Positions 6,189 through 13,316 of a DNA stretch of 64,000 bases are shown piece by piece. The first letter of the stretch is position 1. Each line of letters opens with the position of its first letter. The notes beneath the pieces were generated by a model. That model had not been told where the DNA came from and did no database searches. It was given only the letters and a program-made list of their open reading frames with translations. The translations under genes were made by a program, and so were the position numbers. The stretch covers positions 1 to 64,000 of IMG/VR virus record IMGVR_UViG_3300049460_000128; one strand, 5' to 3'.

Positions 6189-6247
6189 ACAAGTGTCTCC
6201 TGTTATTTTCCACCAATATAGCATGATATGGTATTTAGAAGACAAAT

Positions 6248-6275
6248 AAAAAAGCCCGCCGAAGCGAGCTTTTTT
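6248..6275 (-). terminator. intrinsic terminator ending the tmRNA operon
   Basis: AAAAAAGCTCGC-TTCG-GCGGGCTTTTTT. Confidence 0.85.
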
Positions 6276-6280
6276 GAGAC

Positions 6281-6606
6281 TTGGATGATGAGGTATGTCT
6301 CTACCCCCACCGTTTAGGCTGCTACAGCCTGACGGAACGAAGAATCGTTTGCATTTACAACGTGCCGACTTTTATTTTCGTGAATCATCGACTTTCACGT
6401 GTTGTCATCTTCGGCTTATTCACCCTGTCGAAACCAGGTCAGGCCCATCATATAAGATTCTCTCGCTTACGTCTCGCGGGATACTGCGCTTTATCCTGAT
6501 AGTGGCCAGCGAAGTTTATCATGCGCTGCTGGTCTAACCTACCGAAAATCTATATGGTGGACCTGTGGGGAATCGAACCCCAGTCCAGAATGCCTCTACG
6601 TCCAAA
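6281..6606 (-). ncRNA. ssrA: tmRNA, circularly permuted (two-piece)
   Basis: Acceptor piece ...GGACTGGGGTTCGATTCCCCACAGGTCCACCA ends at 6555; coding piece starts GGGCCTGACCTGGTTTCGAC at 6446; G3:U70 pair; tag ORF 6352-6314 = ANDSSFRQAVAA*. Confidence 0.92.
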
Positions 6607-6668
6607 TCTGTCAGTTGCCTGACCACAACAATGTAATGCGCCTATCAGGCGGGGTAAGCCCCGTCATC

Positions 6669-6750
6669 AATGCGTATTGGTTAGAATACGTTTCCCCTGT
6701 GACCGCTCGAAGTGTCACCCCTGTACTCAGTACCCTAACCAATAAACATT
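6669..6750 (-). ncRNA. candidate small structured RNA
   Basis: Long closing helix AATGTTTATTGGTTAG/CTAACCAATACGCATT with two inner hairpins. Confidence 0.5.
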
Positions 6751-6759
6751 TGCAAAATC

Positions 6760-6898
6760 GTTTAAGCGTGAAGGGAGTCGAACCCTTGAGCGCCCTGCCG
6801 CTACGTTACCGTAGTGTCTGACTCGAACAGACCACTAGGCTCTCCATGCTCTAGTATGTACTCAACCGGGAGATGCCTACCACCCACTGGACCTAAAC
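6760..6898 (-). ncRNA. tRNA-like RNA with two T-loop hairpins
   Basis: 7-bp closing stem GTTTAGG/CTTAAAC; GTCTG-TTCGAGT-CAGAC and GGG-TTCGACT-CCC hairpins. Confidence 0.6.
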
Positions 6899-6936
6899 TT
6901 TTTGCTGGTGACACATTACTGCATCACCAAGACCAC

Positions 6937-6965
6937 AGTATATGGCAATCCATACATGCGGTCAA
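6937..6965 (-). promoter_or_regulatory. sigma70-type promoter of the ncRNA/tmRNA operon
   Basis: TTGACC-17-TATACT. Confidence 0.75.
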
Positions 6966-6984: not shown

Positions 6985-7890
6985 TTAATTCATATGCGAA
7001 TAATCATCTGCCATATGAGTGCGCAGCTTCTTCAAAGCCGCCACCTCAATCTGACGAACACGTTCGCATGAAATATTGTACTTGTCTGCCATCGCCCGCA
7101 ACGGCACACCAGCCCCTTCATCATTTACCAGGAAACGTTGCTCGATGATATACTGCTCGCGTTCGTTCAACTTTTCCATGTACTTCTGGAGGCCGGTTGT
7201 CTGAAGTTCAACCATACGCATACTGGACAATACGTTGGTGGGTTCCAGCGTGTCGTCACTCAGATAATGGTATACGAAGTCATCCATATCAGCACTGTCA
7301 AGGAACTGATTGGTTGGAGGCACATCGATGGAGCTATCACCGCCACGCATACGCATTTCAACTTCACGCACGTCTTCTGGTCTGACCTCCAACGCATCAG
7401 CGGCCCATTTGATCTGTTCTTCGGTCATGCTGCGCCCTACTTCCAAACGACTACGCAGGTTGAAGAACAGCTTGCGATGAGCTTTGGTAGTGAAGCTTTT
7501 CACTATGCGAGAATTGCGAATCACATAGTCCATCATCTCTGCTTTGATCCAGGGAATCGCATAGGTGGCAAAACGCACATTCTGGGCGGGATCGAAGCGA
7601 TGAATTGCTTTCATCATTCCAATACTTCCTTCTTGAACTAGATCATCTTGGCTCATGCCGTAGAATTTCAATTGACGGGCTTGGCTCATGACCAAACGCA
7701 TATAGCTATGAGCCAGTGCGTCAATTGCCTTTTGATCATTGTTTCTCACTCGTACCCACAGCGCATCTTCTTGCGGCGGGGTAAGCATGGGAAACCGCAT
7801 GGCGGTGCTATGGTAATTGTCAATGCTGCTGAGGTTTACCGTAACACCAAGGTTCAATGGCTTATTAATACCAGTAGCGTCAAGTTTCAT
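6985..7890 (-). CDS. rpoH: RNA polymerase sigma factor, RpoH (sigma-32) family
   Basis: DLVQEGSIGMMKAIHRFDP, RFATYAIPWIKAE, RpoH box HRKLFFNLR, region 4 ISCERVRQIEVAALKKLR. Confidence 0.9.
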   Translation of the reverse strand: MKLDATGINKPLNLGVTVNLSSIDNYHSTAMRFPMLTPPQEDALWVRVRNNDQKAIDALAHSYMRLVMSQARQLKFYGMSQDDLVQEGSIGMMKAIHRFDPAQNVRFATYAIPWIKAEMMDYVIRNSRIVKSFTTKAHRKLFFNLRSRLEVGRSMTEEQIKWAADALEVRPEDVREVEMRMRGGDSSIDVPPTNQFLDSADMDDFVYHYLSDDTLEPTNVLSSMRMVELQTTGLQKYMEKLNEREQYIIEQRFLVNDEGAGVPLRAMADKYNISCERVRQIEVAALKKLRTHMADDYSHMN

Positions 7891-10449: not shown

Positions 10450-10626
10450 AGGCACCCCGGGTGGAATCGAACCACCGACCCTTCGATTAAATATCGACCG
10501 CTCTATCGTCAAAACTATTCAACAGGTCAACAGCGGGACGTCACTCGCTATCTTGCTGTCTAGCCGTTTATTCAATTCCACCGGCGACCGTCGTCACCTT
10601 ATGTGGTACCTCTGAGCTACGGGGCA
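10450..10626 (-). ncRNA. tRNA-like RNA (Lys-UUU-like) with ~110-nt D-loop
   Basis: GCCCCG-TA-GCTC...GAGC, anticodon loop TATTTAA, GGTGG-TTCGATT-CCACC, CGGGGT; ends CCT rather than CCA. Confidence 0.7.
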
Positions 10627-10665
10627 TTGCTTGGTTAAAAGATGATTGCTCATCTCTTGAATTCT

Positions 10666-10826
10666 TGGCGTCAACTGCCGGATTCGAACCGGACGACGGA
10701 ATACACTTTTGACCTCTATGAGGCGGGTATGCCCTTACTTTCACCGTTAGGCTGTCCACTTCTGCCCATGCCATTCAGCAAAGACATATCTGCGGCGTTC
10801 GTTCTGCCAGACTGAACTAAGTCAAC
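10666..10826 (-). ncRNA. tRNA frame with anticodon arm replaced by ~105-nt insert
   Basis: Acceptor GTTGACT/AGTTGAC-G-CCA, D arm GTTC-AGTCTGGCA-GAAC, T arm CCGG-TTCGAAT-CCGG. Confidence 0.75.
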
Positions 10827-10828
10827 AA

Positions 10829-10933
10829 GTATGGCGGGGAATTGAACCTCCAGTCCAAAATGAGCAGCACCATGGCGCCGTTTCACTTGGCCCTAGTTTC
10901 CTAGGCTGCTTCCCAAAGCAGCGTCGACCATAC
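10829..10933 (-). ncRNA. tRNA/tmRNA-TLD-like structured RNA
   Basis: GTATGGT/GCCATAC stem, GGACTGGAGG-TTCAATT-CCCC T-arm, three hairpins including CCTAG-GAAA-CTAGG. Confidence 0.55.
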
Positions 10934-11087
10934 AATGTGGGTTGGAGTAACTTGGCGATTTAATCCGGGACTCTGCATTCTTGCCCGACTTCATGTTTCG
11001 CCACCTGAAAGCTAGTTTGTCTAGTCCTCACCACGGAGTCAATAGTACAGCAAACCACGGAAGTTCGCAACACTATTGACACCACAT

Positions 11088-11939
11088 TCACTTGCGGGGT
11101 TTCTTTATTGCACTGAAAAGTAGCATCAATGCAACACCGGTAAGGAACATCACCCAACTTTCAGGCTCTGGAACAGGAGTCGTAATGGGTGGAGTGACGA
11201 TTGGCGGAACAATCGGTGGAGTAATTACAATGCAGCAACCACCGCCACCACCACCGCCATTGTCGATCGGGCTCCACGGAGTGAATCCGTGCCAACCGTT
11301 ACCGCCAGGATTCACCAATGAATTGTTGGGCTCACCTGAGCCAGTAGTGATACTCCCTGGGGCAACATTTGACGCACCACCACCCCCGCCTCCGCCACCA
11401 CCTTCAGTTGGTTCTGCGGGTTGTTCAGCTTGTGCTTGAGCAACTTCAGCAGTTTCACCACCACCTTTATGTGAACCAGTAGTTACCTGGGTTTCCGGCA
11501 ACCGCTTCACACGGCTGATATTTTGGCAAATAGTTGGTACCAGGATACAAGTTTCGCCCTCGCAGTACACCAATGCTTCCTCTTTACGAGTGGGTGACCA
11601 TTTGTCACGAGTTGTTGCCAGACAGATTTGCGGCTTAGCACTCTTGCCACCAAAGTGCATATCGGTGATGGTCGACTCATATGCGTGGATGCCAGTAATT
11701 CGATCTTTCGTGATGGTCACGACTTCATCGAACTGCTTTTTCTCCAAACGCTGTTTGAACTTAGCCCGCAGTTCAGGCGAAAGATCACGATAATGATCAA
11801 TCGCATTCGAGACGGCGCCCTTGTAGGGATTGACACCTGGGTTGTCCCACGAACAGGTGTCAAGTATTACCGCTTGGGAACTGGCCATGGTCCCCAGGAA
11901 CAAAAGTCCCATCAATGCCTTAAAAAGTTTCATATACAA
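11088..11939 (-). CDS. MHFG-type PEP-CTERM surface protein
   Basis: Signal peptide, CSWDNPG, DMHFGG, Gly-rich linker, C-term VPEPESW + TM helix + KKPRK. Confidence 0.85.
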   Translation of the reverse strand: MYMKLFKALMGLLFLGTMASSQAVILDTCSWDNPGVNPYKGAVSNAIDHYRDLSPELRAKFKQRLEKKQFDEVVTITKDRITGIHAYESTITDMHFGGKSAKPQICLATTRDKWSPTRKEEALVYCEGETCILVPTICQNISRVKRLPETQVTTGSHKGGGETAEVAQAQAEQPAEPTEGGGGGGGGGASNVAPGSITTGSGEPNNSLVNPGGNGWHGFTPWSPIDNGGGGGGGCCIVITPPIVPPIVTPPITTPVPEPESWVMFLTGVALMLLFSAIKKPRK

Positions 11940-12040
11940 TTCCTCAATTGGTTGCCCTATATATCATATGGCGCAATCGAATGGTATATTAAAATTATGC
12001 TAATTCATAAAACCAAATCATCAACTATTTGATATTTGCC

Positions 12041-12069
12041 TTGATCTGGCAACCAAATGAATGTATCAT
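12041..12069 (+). promoter_or_regulatory. sigma70-type promoter with operator motif
   Basis: TTGATC-17-TATCAT; spacer ends CAACCAAATGAATG. Confidence 0.7.
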
Positions 12070-12091
12070 GTATTCATTAACTGGAGGGAAT

Positions 12092-12520
12092 ATGAAAACC
12101 ATCTCGGCAACGGTAACTCAATATCAAGCAGATGACGGCACGCCATTCGACAGCGAAGCGGCATGCAAGCTGTACGAGGATGAACTGAAACGCACCTCCT
12201 ACTGGATCGTGTACTTCAATCCAGACCTCACGGAAGGGCGGGGCACGCAGTATTCCACGGCATTCAGTGTGGTCACGCCATACGGCAAGAGTGATGCGCA
12301 AATGTGGATGACGGACTACTGCATGCAGAAACATGGTCGCCCAGTGGCATTCGTGCAAGGCGCATCGCCATGCCCAAACTGGACTCTGAGTGAGCTCGAT
12401 CGCAAAGCATACGAAGCCCACAAGGCCCGTACTCCTGATCGTTACAACCAGCACACGGTTGGCGTGTTGAAGCTGAAAGGTGACGACAAGCTGCACTACG
12501 CCTTGACCTTGGTCAAATAG
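12092..12520 (+). CDS. hypothetical phage protein
   Basis: GGAGG RBS, MKTISAT...YQADDGTPFDSEAACKLYE...PDLTEGRG. Confidence 0.8.
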   Translation: MKTISATVTQYQADDGTPFDSEAACKLYEDELKRTSYWIVYFNPDLTEGRGTQYSTAFSVVTPYGKSDAQMWMTDYCMQKHGRPVAFVQGASPCPNWTLSELDRKAYEAHKARTPDRYNQHTVGVLKLKGDDKLHYALTLVK

Positions 12521-12524
12521 TCGT

Positions 12525-12552
12525 AAAAAAGCCCCTAGGCTAGGGGCTTTTT
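12525..12552. terminator. bidirectional intrinsic terminator
   Basis: AAAAAAGCCCCTAG-G-CTAGGGGCTTTTT between convergent units. Confidence 0.85.
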
Positions 12553-12555
12553 GTT

Positions 12556-12709
12556 TGGTGGCGAGAGGAGGGGTCGAACCTCCAATGTGCTACACATTGA
12601 CAAATATGCGTGCTCGAGGATCCGGATCCAATTGGCCGCCCTACACTCGTCAACTTAGAACACTCTCCAGCTCATCGGCTGGCGTATCTACCAATTCTAC
12701 TACCCCGCC
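12556..12709 (-). ncRNA. tRNA frame with ~80-nt variable-region insert and 6-nt anticodon loop
   Basis: GGCGGGG/TCTCGCC-A-CCA, D arm with AATTGGTAGA, CCAGC-CGATGA-GCTGG, GGAGG-TTCGACC-CCTCC. Confidence 0.75.
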
Positions 12710-12712
12710 TAA

Positions 12713-13062
12713 AATGTAATGGTGGATGACCGTTGGTGTGCTATTACGCCCAATGCTCAACGGGTCTTGTACGACATCGCGCTTACTCTAATCCCTTTAC
12801 CCTCAGCGCTTACCTAGGGGCCGTTATCCTTCGGCATCCTGTAGTCATGGGCTACGCCCCATAACATGATGACCAATTTCCTGCCAGCTGGGAAATTGTT
12901 GCCATCTTATCGTACAAACTGTACTTGTCCTTCCCCGGTGGATTATGCGCGATGATTGCCACCATCTGAAGCTGGGATCGCTTCCGCCCTTATCCACTTT
13001 GCAACTCTTTAAAGGATGGCTGCTTCTAAGCCCACCTTCCAAAAGTCATCCACCATTACATT
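12713..13062 (-). ncRNA. structured RNA containing a split mimic of 23S rRNA H43/H44 (GTPase-associated centre)
   Basis: Perfect 18-bp terminal helix; GGCTTAGAAGCAGCCATCCTTTAAAGAG (13032-13005) and GCGTAATAGCACAC (12749-12736). Confidence 0.85.
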
Positions 13063-13063
13063 C

Positions 13064-13280
13064 ATGTGCTTTGTTGGGCACCATCCGCCACCCCCATCGG
13101 GTCAGCATCCACAGCGGGATTACTAGGGACTCGAACCCTTCTTCGCTTGACTGTACGGGCCAAGCTAGTACGCTATCATGAACCATCTGCATCACTTACC
13201 GCGAATAGGCGATGTTTCCCGTTCATGCTTCCCAAATTAATGGTTTTTCACGTAGACGACTGATGTCCAACAAAGCACAT
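13064..13280 (-). ncRNA. structured RNA with T-loop hairpin
   Basis: 14-bp closing helix ATGTGCTTTGTTGG/CCAACAAAGCACAT; AGGG-TTCGAGT-CCCT; starts just after promoter. Confidence 0.7.
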
Positions 13281-13287
13281 ACATGAC

Positions 13288-13316
13288 ACTATACTGCTGG
13301 TTCAGCTACCAGTCAA
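13288..13316 (-). promoter_or_regulatory. sigma70-type promoter of ncRNA operon
   Basis: TTGACT-17-TATAGT. Confidence 0.75.

What the first reader, a model, noticed from the sequence alone, without database searches (positions are those of the whole stretch)
6281..6606. Circularly permuted two-piece tmRNA in a phage
Seen: on the minus strand the 3' acceptor segment (T arm, CAGGTCC-A-CCA ending at 6555) comes before the 5' segment (GGGCCTG at 6446). The two form a 7-bp acceptor stem with G3:U70. The ~108-nt intervening segment has complementary ends (ATATAGATT / AATCTTATAT). The tag is ANDSSFRQAVAA*, and the outer ends can pair (TTGGA..GAGG / CCTC..TCCAA). Known: permuted tmRNAs occur in alphaproteobacteria, some cyanobacteria and a betaproteobacterial lineage. 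Inference: this is either captured from such a host or an independent phage permutation. The long structured intervening piece may itself be released as an RNA.
Basis: partly seen in the sequence, partly recalled or inferred. Interest (0 to 1): 0.8.

Follow-up and report, generated by a model that had tools for sequence, protein, structure and literature searches.

The report
Phage-encoded two-piece (permuted) tmRNA gene
A jumbo phage from a rhizosphere sample carries an intact, circularly permuted gene for the ribosome-rescue RNA tmRNA; it belongs to a large, mostly unannotated phage-borne branch of the 'betaproteobacterial' two-piece type, so it is a new member of a known kind, not a new invention.

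Summary
ARAGORN calls a permuted tmRNA at 6223-6647 (-), with the tag ANDSSFRQAVAA. Rfam matches tmRNA_permuted (93.5 bits, threshold 47) and beta_tmRNA (87.6, threshold 84). The acceptor stem, G3:U70, the encoded CCA, the 108-nt intervening sequence (IVS) with paired ends and the pairing of the outer ends are all present.

Contigs from independent samples keep the same gene order, so it is not an assembly artefact. The window is part of a 296.6-kb IMG/VR phage contig. Its nearest cultured relatives infect Rhizobiaceae.

The RNA belongs to the beta-type lineage. It sits among well over 150 distinct viral-contig tmRNAs, and four cultured Xanthomonas and Stenotrophomonas phages carry related ones that are not annotated. 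In these phages the IVS is mostly 50-140 nt, against 3-4 nt in Rhodocyclaceae. Phage two-piece tmRNAs were already published in 2022.

The IVS closing stem covaries across the family. The IVS interior is swapped freely, and in other phages it carries small membrane-peptide ORFs or tRNA-like elements. The window's IVS has no such cargo, and its fold is not unusually stable. Whether it is released as an RNA is untested.

Verdict: a real, probably functional, new member of a known kind.

The parts
6937..6965 (-). Sigma-70-like promoter candidate (TTGACC, 17 nt, TATACT) just downstream of the sigma-factor gene. It is a possible start of the precursor transcript.
   Evidence: Consensus scan, 10 of 12 matches. 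Two such sites were found and 1.9 were expected by chance, so this is weak evidence on its own.
6646..6932 (-). Structured non-coding leader of unknown role. It contains a T-arm-like hairpin (about 6770-6786) and a possible sigma-32-like motif at 6647-6670.
   Evidence: MFE -104.1 kcal/mol, z = -3.13, 1 of 200 shuffles folds as well. No Rfam family matches. It is not a duplicate of the tmRNA. It is about 90-92% conserved in runs X3 and X4.
6555..6636 (-). Acceptor piece; its 5' end is not mapped. It holds the P2 distal strand UGUUGU (6625-6630), the hairpin GUCAG-GCAA-CUGAC (6610-6623), the outer-pairing segment (6593-6609), the P2a strand CAUUCUG (6586-6592), the T arm (6566-6582), the acceptor 3' strand CAGGUCC (6559-6565) and ACCA (6555-6558).
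   Evidence: Rfam alignments and coordinates. P2a pairs in 94.9% of cells across 56 unique family combinations, against 33-47% in shifted registers. The variants in run X2 keep the hairpin: GCAA becomes GUAA and U-A becomes U-G.
6447..6554 (-). Intervening sequence (IVS) of 108 nt, removed on maturation. The closing stem pairs 6544-6554 with 6451-6462, and the 4-nt leader UGAU (6447-6450) precedes G1.
   Evidence: Across the family, a sequence's own IVS ends give a mean duplex energy of -12.9 kcal/mol, against -5.6 for swapped partners. The relative in run X3 has 5 substitutions and 19 inserted nt in the IVS. The substitutions and 5 of the 6 insertion sites fall in predicted loops or stay G-U compatible; one insertion abuts a weak 3-bp stem.
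6248..6446 (-). Coding piece. It holds the acceptor 5' strand GGGCCUG (6440-6446), the D-loop analogue (6428-6439), the P2a strand CAGGGUG (6421-6427), the P2 distal strand ACAACA (6400-6405), the predicted PK1 (6364-6399), the resume codon and tag ORF (6314-6352), the 3' hairpin whose loop pairs with the acceptor piece (6276-6301) and the intrinsic terminator (6248-6275).
   Evidence: The relatives in run X3 (6357-6446) and run X4 (6248-6316) show no listed differences here, while the flanking DNA differs.
6985..7890 (-). Context only: a phage gene for an RpoH-like sigma factor, directly upstream of the tmRNA locus on the same strand.
   Evidence: Pfam Sigma70_r2 and r4. tblastn gives 38-39% identity to genes annotated rpoH.

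Best explanation
This is an intact ssrA gene in the circularly permuted form, carried by a jumbo phage. It belongs to a phage-borne radiation of the 'betaproteobacterial' two-piece tmRNA type.

Inferred mechanism, by analogy with Caulobacter and other two-piece tmRNAs:
1. One precursor is transcribed on the minus strand and ends at the terminator at 6248-6275.
2. The IVS folds back on itself through its closing stem. This presents the acceptor stem like a pre-tRNA.
3. RNase P cuts before G6446.
4. tRNA 3'-end processing frees the encoded CCA at 6555.
5. The IVS is lost, and the two pieces stay together through the acceptor stem, P2 and the loop-to-leader pairing.
6. Host AlaRS charges the RNA through G3:U70.
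7. With host SmpB and EF-Tu, the RNA enters stalled ribosomes and adds ANDSSFRQAVAA, which marks the protein for proteolysis.

For the phage, the likely benefit is more ribosome-rescue capacity while mRNAs are being degraded during infection.

Shown here: the gene's anatomy, its family membership, covariation, conservation in relatives and the permuted gene order in independent samples. Inferred: processing, charging, tagging and the benefit to the phage.
For: - Detection: ARAGORN permuted tmRNA with a tag. RF04321 scores 93.5 bits against a threshold of 47, and RF01850 scores 87.6 against 84, matching all 331 model positions.
- Transcription signals: a terminator and a promoter-like site.
- Family covariation: acceptor stems covary with G3:U70 invariant. 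P2a is 94.9% paired, with 3-6 pair types at six of its seven positions. The closing stem gives -12.9 against -5.6 kcal/mol for swapped partners.
- Outer pairing: two compensatory double changes relative to L014, GGA/UCC to GGG/CCC and GAGG/CCUC to AAGG/CCUU.
- Independent samples: the X3 contig spans the coding 5' end, the IVS, the CCA and the T arm in the same order. All listed differences in runs X2, X3 and X4 fall outside the tRNA-like domain, the predicted PK1 and the 3' hairpin.
- Phage context.
- Phage lineage: more than 120 IMG/VR contigs match at an IVS of 90-120 nt. In the scan that ignored IVS length, 66 newly fetched viral loci were permuted and 4 standard. Four cultured phages carry one. 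In the tree the window sits inside a 19-member clade made up only of viral contigs, with support 0.887.
Against: - There are no RNA data, so processing, charging and tagging are untested.
- The beta_tmRNA score is only 3.6 bits above its threshold, and the model's promoter part does not match.
- The MFE cofold does not reproduce the canonical P2a helix.
- PK1 is predicted only from the sequence and from one hairpin of the Rfam model.
- No SmpB gene was found among the neighbouring genes I scanned. Only 64 of the 296.6 kb could be read.
- The tree rests on about 270 nt, and its inner nodes are weakly supported (0.15-0.68).
- The host is inferred from protein similarity to phages of Rhizobiaceae and was not shown.
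Confidence: 0.8

Rival explanations
1. The phage recently captured the ssrA gene of its current host, a bacterium with a permuted tmRNA.
For: Permuted tmRNAs occur in alphaproteobacteria, and the phage's nearest cultured relatives infect Sinorhizobium, Agrobacterium and Rhizobium. From my own memory, not tested here, the 12-residue tag ending in AVAA resembles alphaproteobacterial tags.
Against: - Within the Rfam clan the beta model is the best match, not the alpha or cyano model.
- The subfamily motif gave no match in 185,579 species genomes.
- The closest cores are all viral, at most 74% identical. The Rhodocyclaceae genes are 57-60% identical.
- The long IVS with a closing stem is typical of the phage genes. 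The bacterial beta-type genes have 3-4 nt there.
Confidence: 0.08
2. The permutation arose independently in a phage from a standard one-piece tmRNA.
For: None specific. The IVS is far longer than in bacterial beta-type genes.
Against: The gene matches RF01850 over the model's full length. It also shares lineage-specific parts with the Accumulibacter and Rhodocyclaceae genes: the hairpin between the P2 distal helix and P2a, the 3' hairpin whose loop pairs with the leader, and the same break point.
Confidence: 0.03
3. The gene is a decoy or a pseudogene. It would bind SmpB or ribosomes without tagging, as proposed for the tRNA-like-domain-only RNA of mycobacteriophage DS6A (PMC4131195).
For: No function has been shown, and no SmpB gene was seen nearby.
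Against: The tag ORF is complete, with the usual sequence context before the resume codon and an ...AVAA end. The predicted PK1 and the terminator are intact. Relatives at 90-95% identity show no listed changes in the tRNA-like domain, the predicted PK1 or the 3' hairpin, while the IVS and flanks differ.
Confidence: 0.08
4. In addition to the tmRNA, and not instead of it, the excised 108-nt IVS is a stable RNA with its own function.
For: - The closing stem is conserved with covariation.
- In other phages the same slot holds ORFs with a Shine-Dalgarno site for membrane-like peptides and tRNA-like elements, far above shuffled controls.
- None of the 9 listed differences of the 95%-identical X2 contig lies in the 93 nt of IVS that it covers.
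- The X3 changes avoid predicted stems or preserve pairing.
Against: - The folding energy is ordinary (z = -0.61).
- There is no Rfam match.
- No other locus shares the IVS interior.
- The 24-codon ORF has no Shine-Dalgarno site, and the X3 indels add up to 19 nt, which breaks the frame.
- Up to 3 differences in run X2 were not listed, so their positions are unknown.
Confidence: 0.3
5. The permuted order is an assembly artefact, or bacterial DNA was wrongly joined into a viral contig.
For: The source is a metagenome assembly.
Against: A contig from run X3, a different sample and study, spans 6357-6599 in the same order. X2 spans 6462-6731. Phage genes lie on both sides within a 296.6-kb contig. 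More than 100 other viral contigs have the same arrangement.
Confidence: 0.01

Closest known systems
Betaproteobacterial two-piece tmRNA (Rfam RF01850), for example the Accumulibacter and Rhodocyclaceae genes fetched here as L168, L185 and L191
   Same: Same gene order and break point. Shared parts: the P2 distal helix, a hairpin before P2a, the sequence UUCUGGAC before the T arm, CUGGUUUCGACAGGG after the acceptor stem, a tag beginning AND.., and a 3' hairpin followed by a terminator.
   Different: The IVS is 108 nt with an 11-bp closing stem, against 3-4 nt. The core is only 57-60% identical. The tag has 12 residues, against the 10-residue ANDERFALAA. The bacterial promoter part of the model is absent. 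There is an extra segment (6593-6609) between the hairpin and P2a. The gene sits in a phage.
Published phage-encoded two-piece tmRNAs: Methylophilales phage Melnitz, pelagimyophages and cyanophages (PMC9004378)
   Same: A complete permuted ssrA gene in a lytic-type phage genome, placed next to a transcription-factor gene. That survey counted 53 of 133 unique phage tmRNAs as two-piece.
   Different: Those are mostly marine, and Melnitz's gene is of the alpha type with a glutamine riboswitch. This one is of the beta type, comes from a rhizosphere jumbo phage, and no riboswitch was found.
Unannotated permuted tmRNAs of the cultured phages Stenotrophomonas vB_Sm_QDWS359 and Xanthomonas BUDD, JGB6 and Xoo-sp13
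   Same: RF04321 scores 65.7-113.9 bits in these four. Their IVS is long and closed by a stem. The QDWS359 tag ANDSVYAQAIAA has the same length and pattern as ANDSSFRQAVAA.
   Different: Similarity is limited to the tRNA-like domain and the tag, and the IVS is unrelated. From my own knowledge, not tested here, their hosts are Xanthomonadales, which have one-piece tmRNA. The GenBank records show a 'hypothetical protein' or nothing at these sites.
Caulobacter two-piece tmRNA (Keiler, Shapiro and Williams 2000, as cited in PMC9004378)
   Same: It is the functional precedent: one precursor is cut into an acceptor piece and a coding piece that work together in trans-translation.
   Different: It is of the alphaproteobacterial type, which is thought to be a separate permutation event. 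Nothing has been tested experimentally for the phage gene.

Membership tests
tmRNA (functional class) | A tRNA-like domain: a 7-bp acceptor stem with G3:U70, a T arm and a 3' CCA | tested here: met
   The stem pairs GGGCCUG with CAGGUCC, the T arm is UGGGG-UUCGAUU-CCCCA, and ACCA is encoded.
tmRNA (functional class) | A tag reading frame that starts at an Ala resume codon, ends in hydrophobic ..AA and is followed by a stop codon | tested here: met
   The ORF GCA..GCC UAA at 6314-6352 encodes ANDSSFRQAVAA. The sequence before it, UAAAU-GCA-AAC-GA, matches the Rfam consensus.
tmRNA (functional class) | Pseudoknot PK1 upstream of the resume codon | tested here: inconclusive
   Stem 1 (CGUGAA with UUCACG) matches the hairpin in the Rfam model. 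Stem 2 (GUCGA with UCGGC, 11 nt before the resume codon) was found by inspection only. I did not test it for covariation.
tmRNA (functional class) | Alanylation, SmpB binding and tagging of stalled proteins | not testable with these tools
   This needs biochemistry or genetics. No SmpB gene was found among the 20 neighbouring ORFs scanned.
Permuted (two-piece) tmRNA gene form, Rfam RF04321 | The acceptor 3' half with its CCA lies upstream of the 5' half, with an IVS between them, and the covariance model scores above its threshold | tested here: met
   93.5 bits against a threshold of 47, matching model positions 1-213. ARAGORN marks the gene as tmRNA*. The same order is seen in independent runs.
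Permuted (two-piece) tmRNA gene form, Rfam RF04321 | The precursor is cleaved into two RNAs that stay base-paired | not testable with these tools
   No RNA run that holds the locus was available.
Beta-type two-piece tmRNA, Rfam RF01850 | The covariance model scores above its threshold and beats the alpha and cyano models | tested here: met
   87.6 bits against a threshold of 84, which is marginal. It was the match kept after clan competition.
Beta-type two-piece tmRNA, Rfam RF01850 | Lineage-specific parts: a hairpin between the P2 distal helix and P2a, and a 3' hairpin whose loop pairs with the acceptor-piece leader | tested here: met
   The hairpin is at 6610-6623 and the loop-to-leader pairing is present, with compensatory changes relative to L014.
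Beta-type two-piece tmRNA, Rfam RF01850 | A very short IVS and a promoter directly upstream, as in the bacterial members sampled | tested here: not met
   The IVS is 108 nt, against 3-4 nt in L168, L185, L191, L174 and L246. The part of the model that covers the -35 and -10 elements is unmatched.
Alpha-type two-piece tmRNA, Rfam RF01849 | It is the best-scoring member of the clan | tested here: not met
   It was outcompeted by RF01850 at the same locus. The tool does not show its own score.
Phage-borne long-IVS subgroup (my own working description, not a curated family) | An IVS of tens to hundreds of nt, closed by a stem of about 12 bp that starts at or next to the CCA and ends 4-5 nt (UGAU or UAAU) before G1 | tested here: met
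   The window has an 11-bp stem followed by UGAU. 104 unique IVS show the pattern.

The most novel reading that the evidence does not exclude
In phage-borne permuted tmRNA genes, the IVS may be a cargo slot and not just a spacer. tRNA-processing enzymes would cut out a stem-closed RNA that differs from phage to phage: a mini-mRNA for a membrane peptide of about 24 residues, a tRNA-like element or another structured RNA. On this reading, the window's 108-nt IVS is one such released RNA with a function of its own. I found nothing like this in the papers I could read. The 2025 tmRNA database paper calls a single tRNA inside an IVS 'unique' (PMC11915505).
Probability: 0.3. Interest if true: 0.65.

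Novelty: new member of a known kind. Interest (0 to 1): 0.35.

Why it matters
The gene itself is an ordinary annotation that standard tools recover, and phage two-piece tmRNAs are already published. Three points give it some value.

1. It adds a soil or rhizosphere jumbo phage, probably infecting Rhizobiaceae, to a list dominated by marine phages.
2. It shows that the type of tmRNA a phage carries need not match its host's. Here the gene is beta-type while the host is probably alphaproteobacterial. If my recollection that Xanthomonadales have one-piece tmRNA is right, the related genes in Xanthomonas and Stenotrophomonas phages show the same thing. A phage tmRNA is therefore a poor host marker.
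3. Following this gene exposed a large, mostly unannotated phage family whose IVS is expanded, closed by a covarying stem and swapped freely between relatives. In some relatives the IVS carries small ORFs or tRNA-like elements. That family gives a natural system for studying how permuted RNA genes are processed and whether the excised piece is used.

Tried and rejected
- my first collection pattern had one N too many. It found nothing and wasted a scan.
- no cultured phage matches the locus by blastn at default stringency. Relaxing the E-value found the four cultured phages.
- the sigma-factor gene and two neighbouring genes gave no syntenic relative. The sigma factor is RpoH-like, and the 352-aa neighbour matches only Rhizobium phages.
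- patterns that require the window's own acceptor stem found 22 viral and 16 metagenome loci. None shares the IVS interior.
- the IVS fold is not special.
- the leader is not a duplicate of the tmRNA.
- ARAGORN finds no tRNA in the window's IVS or at 10500-13300.
- across the whole family, a generic duplex test of the leader against the 3' tail was not significant (-10.4 against -9.8 kcal/mol). Support for the outer pairing rests on the window, L014 and L022 only.
- 100 kb of Sinorhizobium phage Phosso hold no tmRNA. I did not scan the remaining 370 kb.
- I considered a formal count of structure pairs but left it out, because it would have needed a long typed structure string. I made the pair counts in scripts instead.

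Full report
**What is there**

On the minus strand ARAGORN reports one permuted tmRNA (tmRNA*) at 6223-6647, with the tag ANDSSFRQAVAA. Rfam gives two matches above threshold. tmRNA_permuted (RF04321) scores 93.5 bits against a threshold of 47. beta_tmRNA (RF01850) scores 87.6 against 84, over all 331 model positions. After clan competition the beta model was kept in preference to the alpha, cyano and standard models.

- T arm at 6566-6582.
- Acceptor 3' strand CAGGUCC at 6559-6565, then A and CCA, ending at 6555.
- A 108-nt intervening sequence (IVS) at 6447-6554.
- 5' strand GGGCCUG at 6440-6446, giving seven pairs with G3:U70.
- P2a, pairing CAUUCUG (6586-6592) with CAGGGUG (6421-6427).
- A P2 distal helix, pairing UGUUGU (6625-6630) with ACAACA (6400-6405).
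- A predicted PK1 at 6364-6399.
- The tag ORF at 6314-6352.
- A 3' hairpin at 6276-6301.
- An intrinsic terminator at 6248-6275.

A sigma-70-like promoter candidate lies at 6937-6965.

**Is the permuted order real?**

The window is part of IMGVR_UViG_3300049460_000128, a 296.6-kb viral contig. Public runs were searched for the locus and their contigs were laid on it.
- The probable source sample, a rhizosphere metagenome, holds the locus whole.
- A contig from a different sample and study (X3) covers 6357-6599 at about 90% identity. It spans the 5' end of the coding piece, the whole IVS, the CCA and the T arm, in the same order.
- Another contig (X2, a plant metagenome, 95% identity) covers 6462-6731.

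An assembly rearrangement is therefore excluded as far as contigs can show.

The differences in these relatives are informative.
- None of the listed differences lies in the tRNA-like domain, in 6357-6446 (the predicted PK1 and P2) or in 6248-6316 (the 3' hairpin and terminator).
- The IVS in X3, the acceptor-piece leader in X2 and the DNA beyond the terminator in X4 all vary.
- The X2 changes keep a hairpin at 6610-6623: its GCAA loop becomes GUAA, still a GNRA loop, and a U-A pair becomes U-G.

This is the pattern expected of a gene under selection.

**Context and host**

The window encodes a large terminase, a virion structural protein, a class I ribonucleotide reductase, DnaB-type and other helicases and a UvsX-like recombinase. 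It is a phage.
- The terminase is closest to Sinorhizobium phage Phosso (62%) and Agrobacterium phage Atu_ph07 (55%).
- A neighbouring 352-aa protein matches only Rhizobium phages.

The host is therefore probably in the Rhizobiaceae. This is an inference. Directly upstream of the tmRNA lies an RpoH-like sigma-factor gene. No integrase or SmpB gene was seen among the neighbours.

**Where it comes from**

Phage-encoded two-piece tmRNAs are already in the literature. A survey of 18,146 phage genomes found 133 unique tmRNAs, of which ARAGORN called 53 two-piece, mostly from marine phages (PMC9004378). The 2025 tmRNA database lists 79 unique bacteriophage sequences (PMC11915505).

I looked for relatives with DNA patterns.
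ARAGORN called 115 of them permuted tmRNAs, mostly with tags like ANDExFALAA.
- A pattern that ignores IVS length also hit the limit. Among its newly fetched viral loci, 66 were permuted and 4 standard. Their IVS ranged from 4 to 211 nt, mostly 50-140.
- The same pattern in 185,579 species genomes gave mostly standard tmRNAs (73) and only 9 permuted ones. Five of those (two Accumulibacter, one Rhodocyclaceae and two MAGs of unresolved affiliation) have an IVS of 3-4 nt.
- The sampled viral genes match RF01850, where they reach its threshold, and never the alpha or cyano models.

The viral genes share lineage-specific parts with the Accumulibacter and Rhodocyclaceae genes: a hairpin between the P2 distal helix and P2a, and a 3' hairpin followed by a terminator. 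The phage genes are therefore homologous to the beta type. An independent permutation is not supported.

A recent capture from a host is not supported either.
- The window's core is at most 74% identical to any other sequence, and its best matches are all viral. The Rhodocyclaceae genes are 57-60% identical.
- In a FastTree of 160 unique cores the window sits inside a 19-member clade made up only of viral contigs, with support 0.887. The inner nodes are weak.
- A motif specific to the window and its nearest structural relative, L014, is absent from all the species genomes and from all other viral contigs.

Four cultured phages carry related permuted tmRNAs that their GenBank records do not annotate: Xanthomonas phages BUDD, JGB6 and Xoo-sp13, and Stenotrophomonas phage vB_Sm_QDWS359. 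The tag of the last, ANDSVYAQAIAA, resembles the window's.

**Structure tests across the family**

- Acceptor stems covary (GGGCCUG, GGGCCAG, GGGGAUG, GGGGGUG, GGGUGCG and others, each with its complement), while G3:U70 never changes. My locus filter required a paired stem, so only the variety of pairs counts as evidence here.
- P2a, which was not part of any filter, is paired in 94.9% of cells over 56 unique combinations, with 3-6 pair types at six of its seven positions. Shifted registers give 33% and 47%.
- The IVS ends form a stem of about 12 bp in nearly all members. A sequence's own ends give a mean duplex energy of -12.9 kcal/mol, against -5.6 for swapped partners. The stem starts at or next to the CCA and ends 4-5 nt (UGAU or UAAU) before G1. 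The window fits this: an 11-bp stem with one bulge, followed by UGAU.
The window has UUUGGA-CGUA-GAGG against CCUC-AUCA-UCCAAG. L014 has UUUGGG-AGUA-AAGG against CCUU-GUUC-CCCAAG. That makes two compensatory double changes. L022 has a similar arrangement. A generic test across the whole family was not significant.

**The intervening sequence**

The fold of the window's IVS is not unusually stable (z = -0.61). It has no Rfam match, and no other locus shares its interior. Its 24-codon ORF lacks a Shine-Dalgarno site, and the X3 indels add up to 19 nt, which breaks the frame.

Mild support for a conserved structure comes from two observations:
- In X3, the substitutions and five of the six insertion sites fall in predicted loops or keep pairing; the sixth insertion abuts a weak 3-bp stem.
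- None of the nine listed differences in X2 lies in the IVS. Up to three further differences were not listed.

Across the family the interior is swapped freely while the core stays similar. The source sample itself holds a second permuted tmRNA with a different 90-nt IVS. In other phages the slot holds recognisable cargo. Among 140 unique IVS:

| Feature | Observed | Shuffled interiors, mean | Shuffled interiors, max |
|---|---|---|---|
| ORF of at least 18 codons behind a Shine-Dalgarno site | 46 | 18.5 | 28 |
| Membrane-like peptide of 23-35 residues | 11 | 0.26 | 2 |
| ORF that stops exactly at the UGA of the conserved UGAU | 15 | 2.0 | 9 |
| Internal T-arm-like hairpin | 7 | 0.1 | 1 |

ARAGORN also calls tRNA-like genes inside two of these IVS.

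**Mechanism**

The anatomy, the family membership, the covariation and the conservation are shown. The rest is inferred from what is known of two-piece tmRNAs (Keiler et al. 2000, as cited in PMC9004378; PMC11915505).
1. One precursor is transcribed.
2. RNase P cuts before G6446.
3. tRNA 3'-end processing exposes the CCA at 6555.
4. The two pieces are held together by the acceptor stem, P2 and the loop-to-leader pairing.
5. Host AlaRS charges the RNA through G3:U70.
6. The RNA enters stalled ribosomes with SmpB and EF-Tu.
7. ANDSSFRQAVAA is added to the stalled protein, which is then degraded.

The benefit to the phage, more ribosome rescue during infection, is a hypothesis shared with earlier papers (PMC7162821, PMC9004378).

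**Verdict**

This is a real and probably functional gene. It is a new member of a known kind, with moderate to low interest in itself. The family-level behaviour of the IVS is the more interesting lead.

Noticed in passing
Loci L283, L297, L330, L338, L339, L374, L004, L016, L022, L082, L363 (inside the tmRNA IVS of each): The IVS of other viral permuted tmRNA genes holds an ORF behind a Shine-Dalgarno site for a membrane-like peptide of 23-35 residues, for example MNDNLNSLAIGVVIVLIVFALVLL. Most stop at the UGA of the conserved UGAU just before G1, and the Shine-Dalgarno site lies in the closing stem. The count is 11 of 140 unique IVS, against 0.26 in shuffles. Another group (L002, L009, L011, L012, L042, L066, L088, L098) encodes MKYTALCPSCF..KHKCF and reads on into the tmRNA 5' end.
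   Followed up: partly
L101 and L114 (IVS); also L050, L107, L342, L375, L132: There are tRNA-like elements inside the IVS. ARAGORN calls tRNA-like genes in L101 and L114, with the closing stem serving as the acceptor stem. Seven IVS hold a T-arm-like hairpin, against 0.1 in shuffles. The 2025 tmRNA database paper describes one such case as unique (PMC11915505).
   Followed up: partly
window 6646-6932 (-): A structured leader lies between the sigma-factor gene and the tmRNA (z = -3.13). It has a T-arm-like hairpin at about 6770-6786, matches no Rfam family and is not a copy of the tmRNA. The motif TTGATG..CCCCGCCT at 6647-6670 loosely resembles a sigma-32 promoter, but it also forms a hairpin.
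   Followed up: partly
window 6985-7890 (-): The phage encodes an RpoH-like (heat-shock type) sigma factor, 38-39% identical to genes annotated rpoH, directly upstream of the tmRNA. This puts two protein-quality-control functions side by side.
   Followed up: partly
window 12555-12712 (-): A tRNA-like RNA has a 7-bp acceptor stem, an anticodon-type arm, a T arm, an encoded CCA and a structured insert of about 80 nt in the variable-arm position. Rfam tRNA scores it 31.5 bits, but ARAGORN misses it, even in intron mode. ARAGORN finds no ordinary tRNA anywhere in the 64 kb.
   Followed up: partly
window 13004-13040: A 37-nt stretch is identical to an unannotated spot between tRNA genes of Pseudomonas phage UNO-G1W1 and nearly identical to phage pf16.
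   Followed up: no
L122 (1441-1892), L123 (about 1477-1820), L124 (1447-1864), L125 (1441-1849): The cultured Xanthomonas phages BUDD, Xoo-sp13 and JGB6 and Stenotrophomonas phage vB_Sm_QDWS359 carry permuted tmRNAs. Their GenBank records do not annotate them, and some are overlapped by 'hypothetical protein' CDS.
   Followed up: yes
L028 (IMGVR_UViG_3300022719_000284, 210 kb): A contig classed as viral holds a bacterial class A RNase P RNA (155 bits), a standard tmRNA (140 bits) and about 17 tRNAs within 7.8 kb. It is either a phage that encodes RNase P RNA or a misclassified bacterial contig.
   Followed up: no
L378:33533-34001 (Sinorhizobium phage Phosso): The closest cultured relative carries a GOLLD RNA (186.6 bits) with a nested tRNA, in a gap of its annotation. 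It also encodes ClpP and a Clp ATPase.
   Followed up: no
L004, L009, L011, L012, L022, L052, L058, L082, L088, L098 (tag regions): Some viral permuted tmRNAs encode unusually long tags of 26-34 residues, for example ANADTFDFSAMSFTGNTVSGKSKVALAA. Several look like an extra peptide fused in front of a normal AN(D/E)..ALAA tag.
   Followed up: no
run X1, record 2 (laid on window 6428-6451 and 6555-6585): The probable source metagenome holds a second permuted tmRNA with a near-identical tRNA-like domain but a different 90-nt IVS. This is direct evidence that the IVS is exchanged between close relatives.
   Followed up: no
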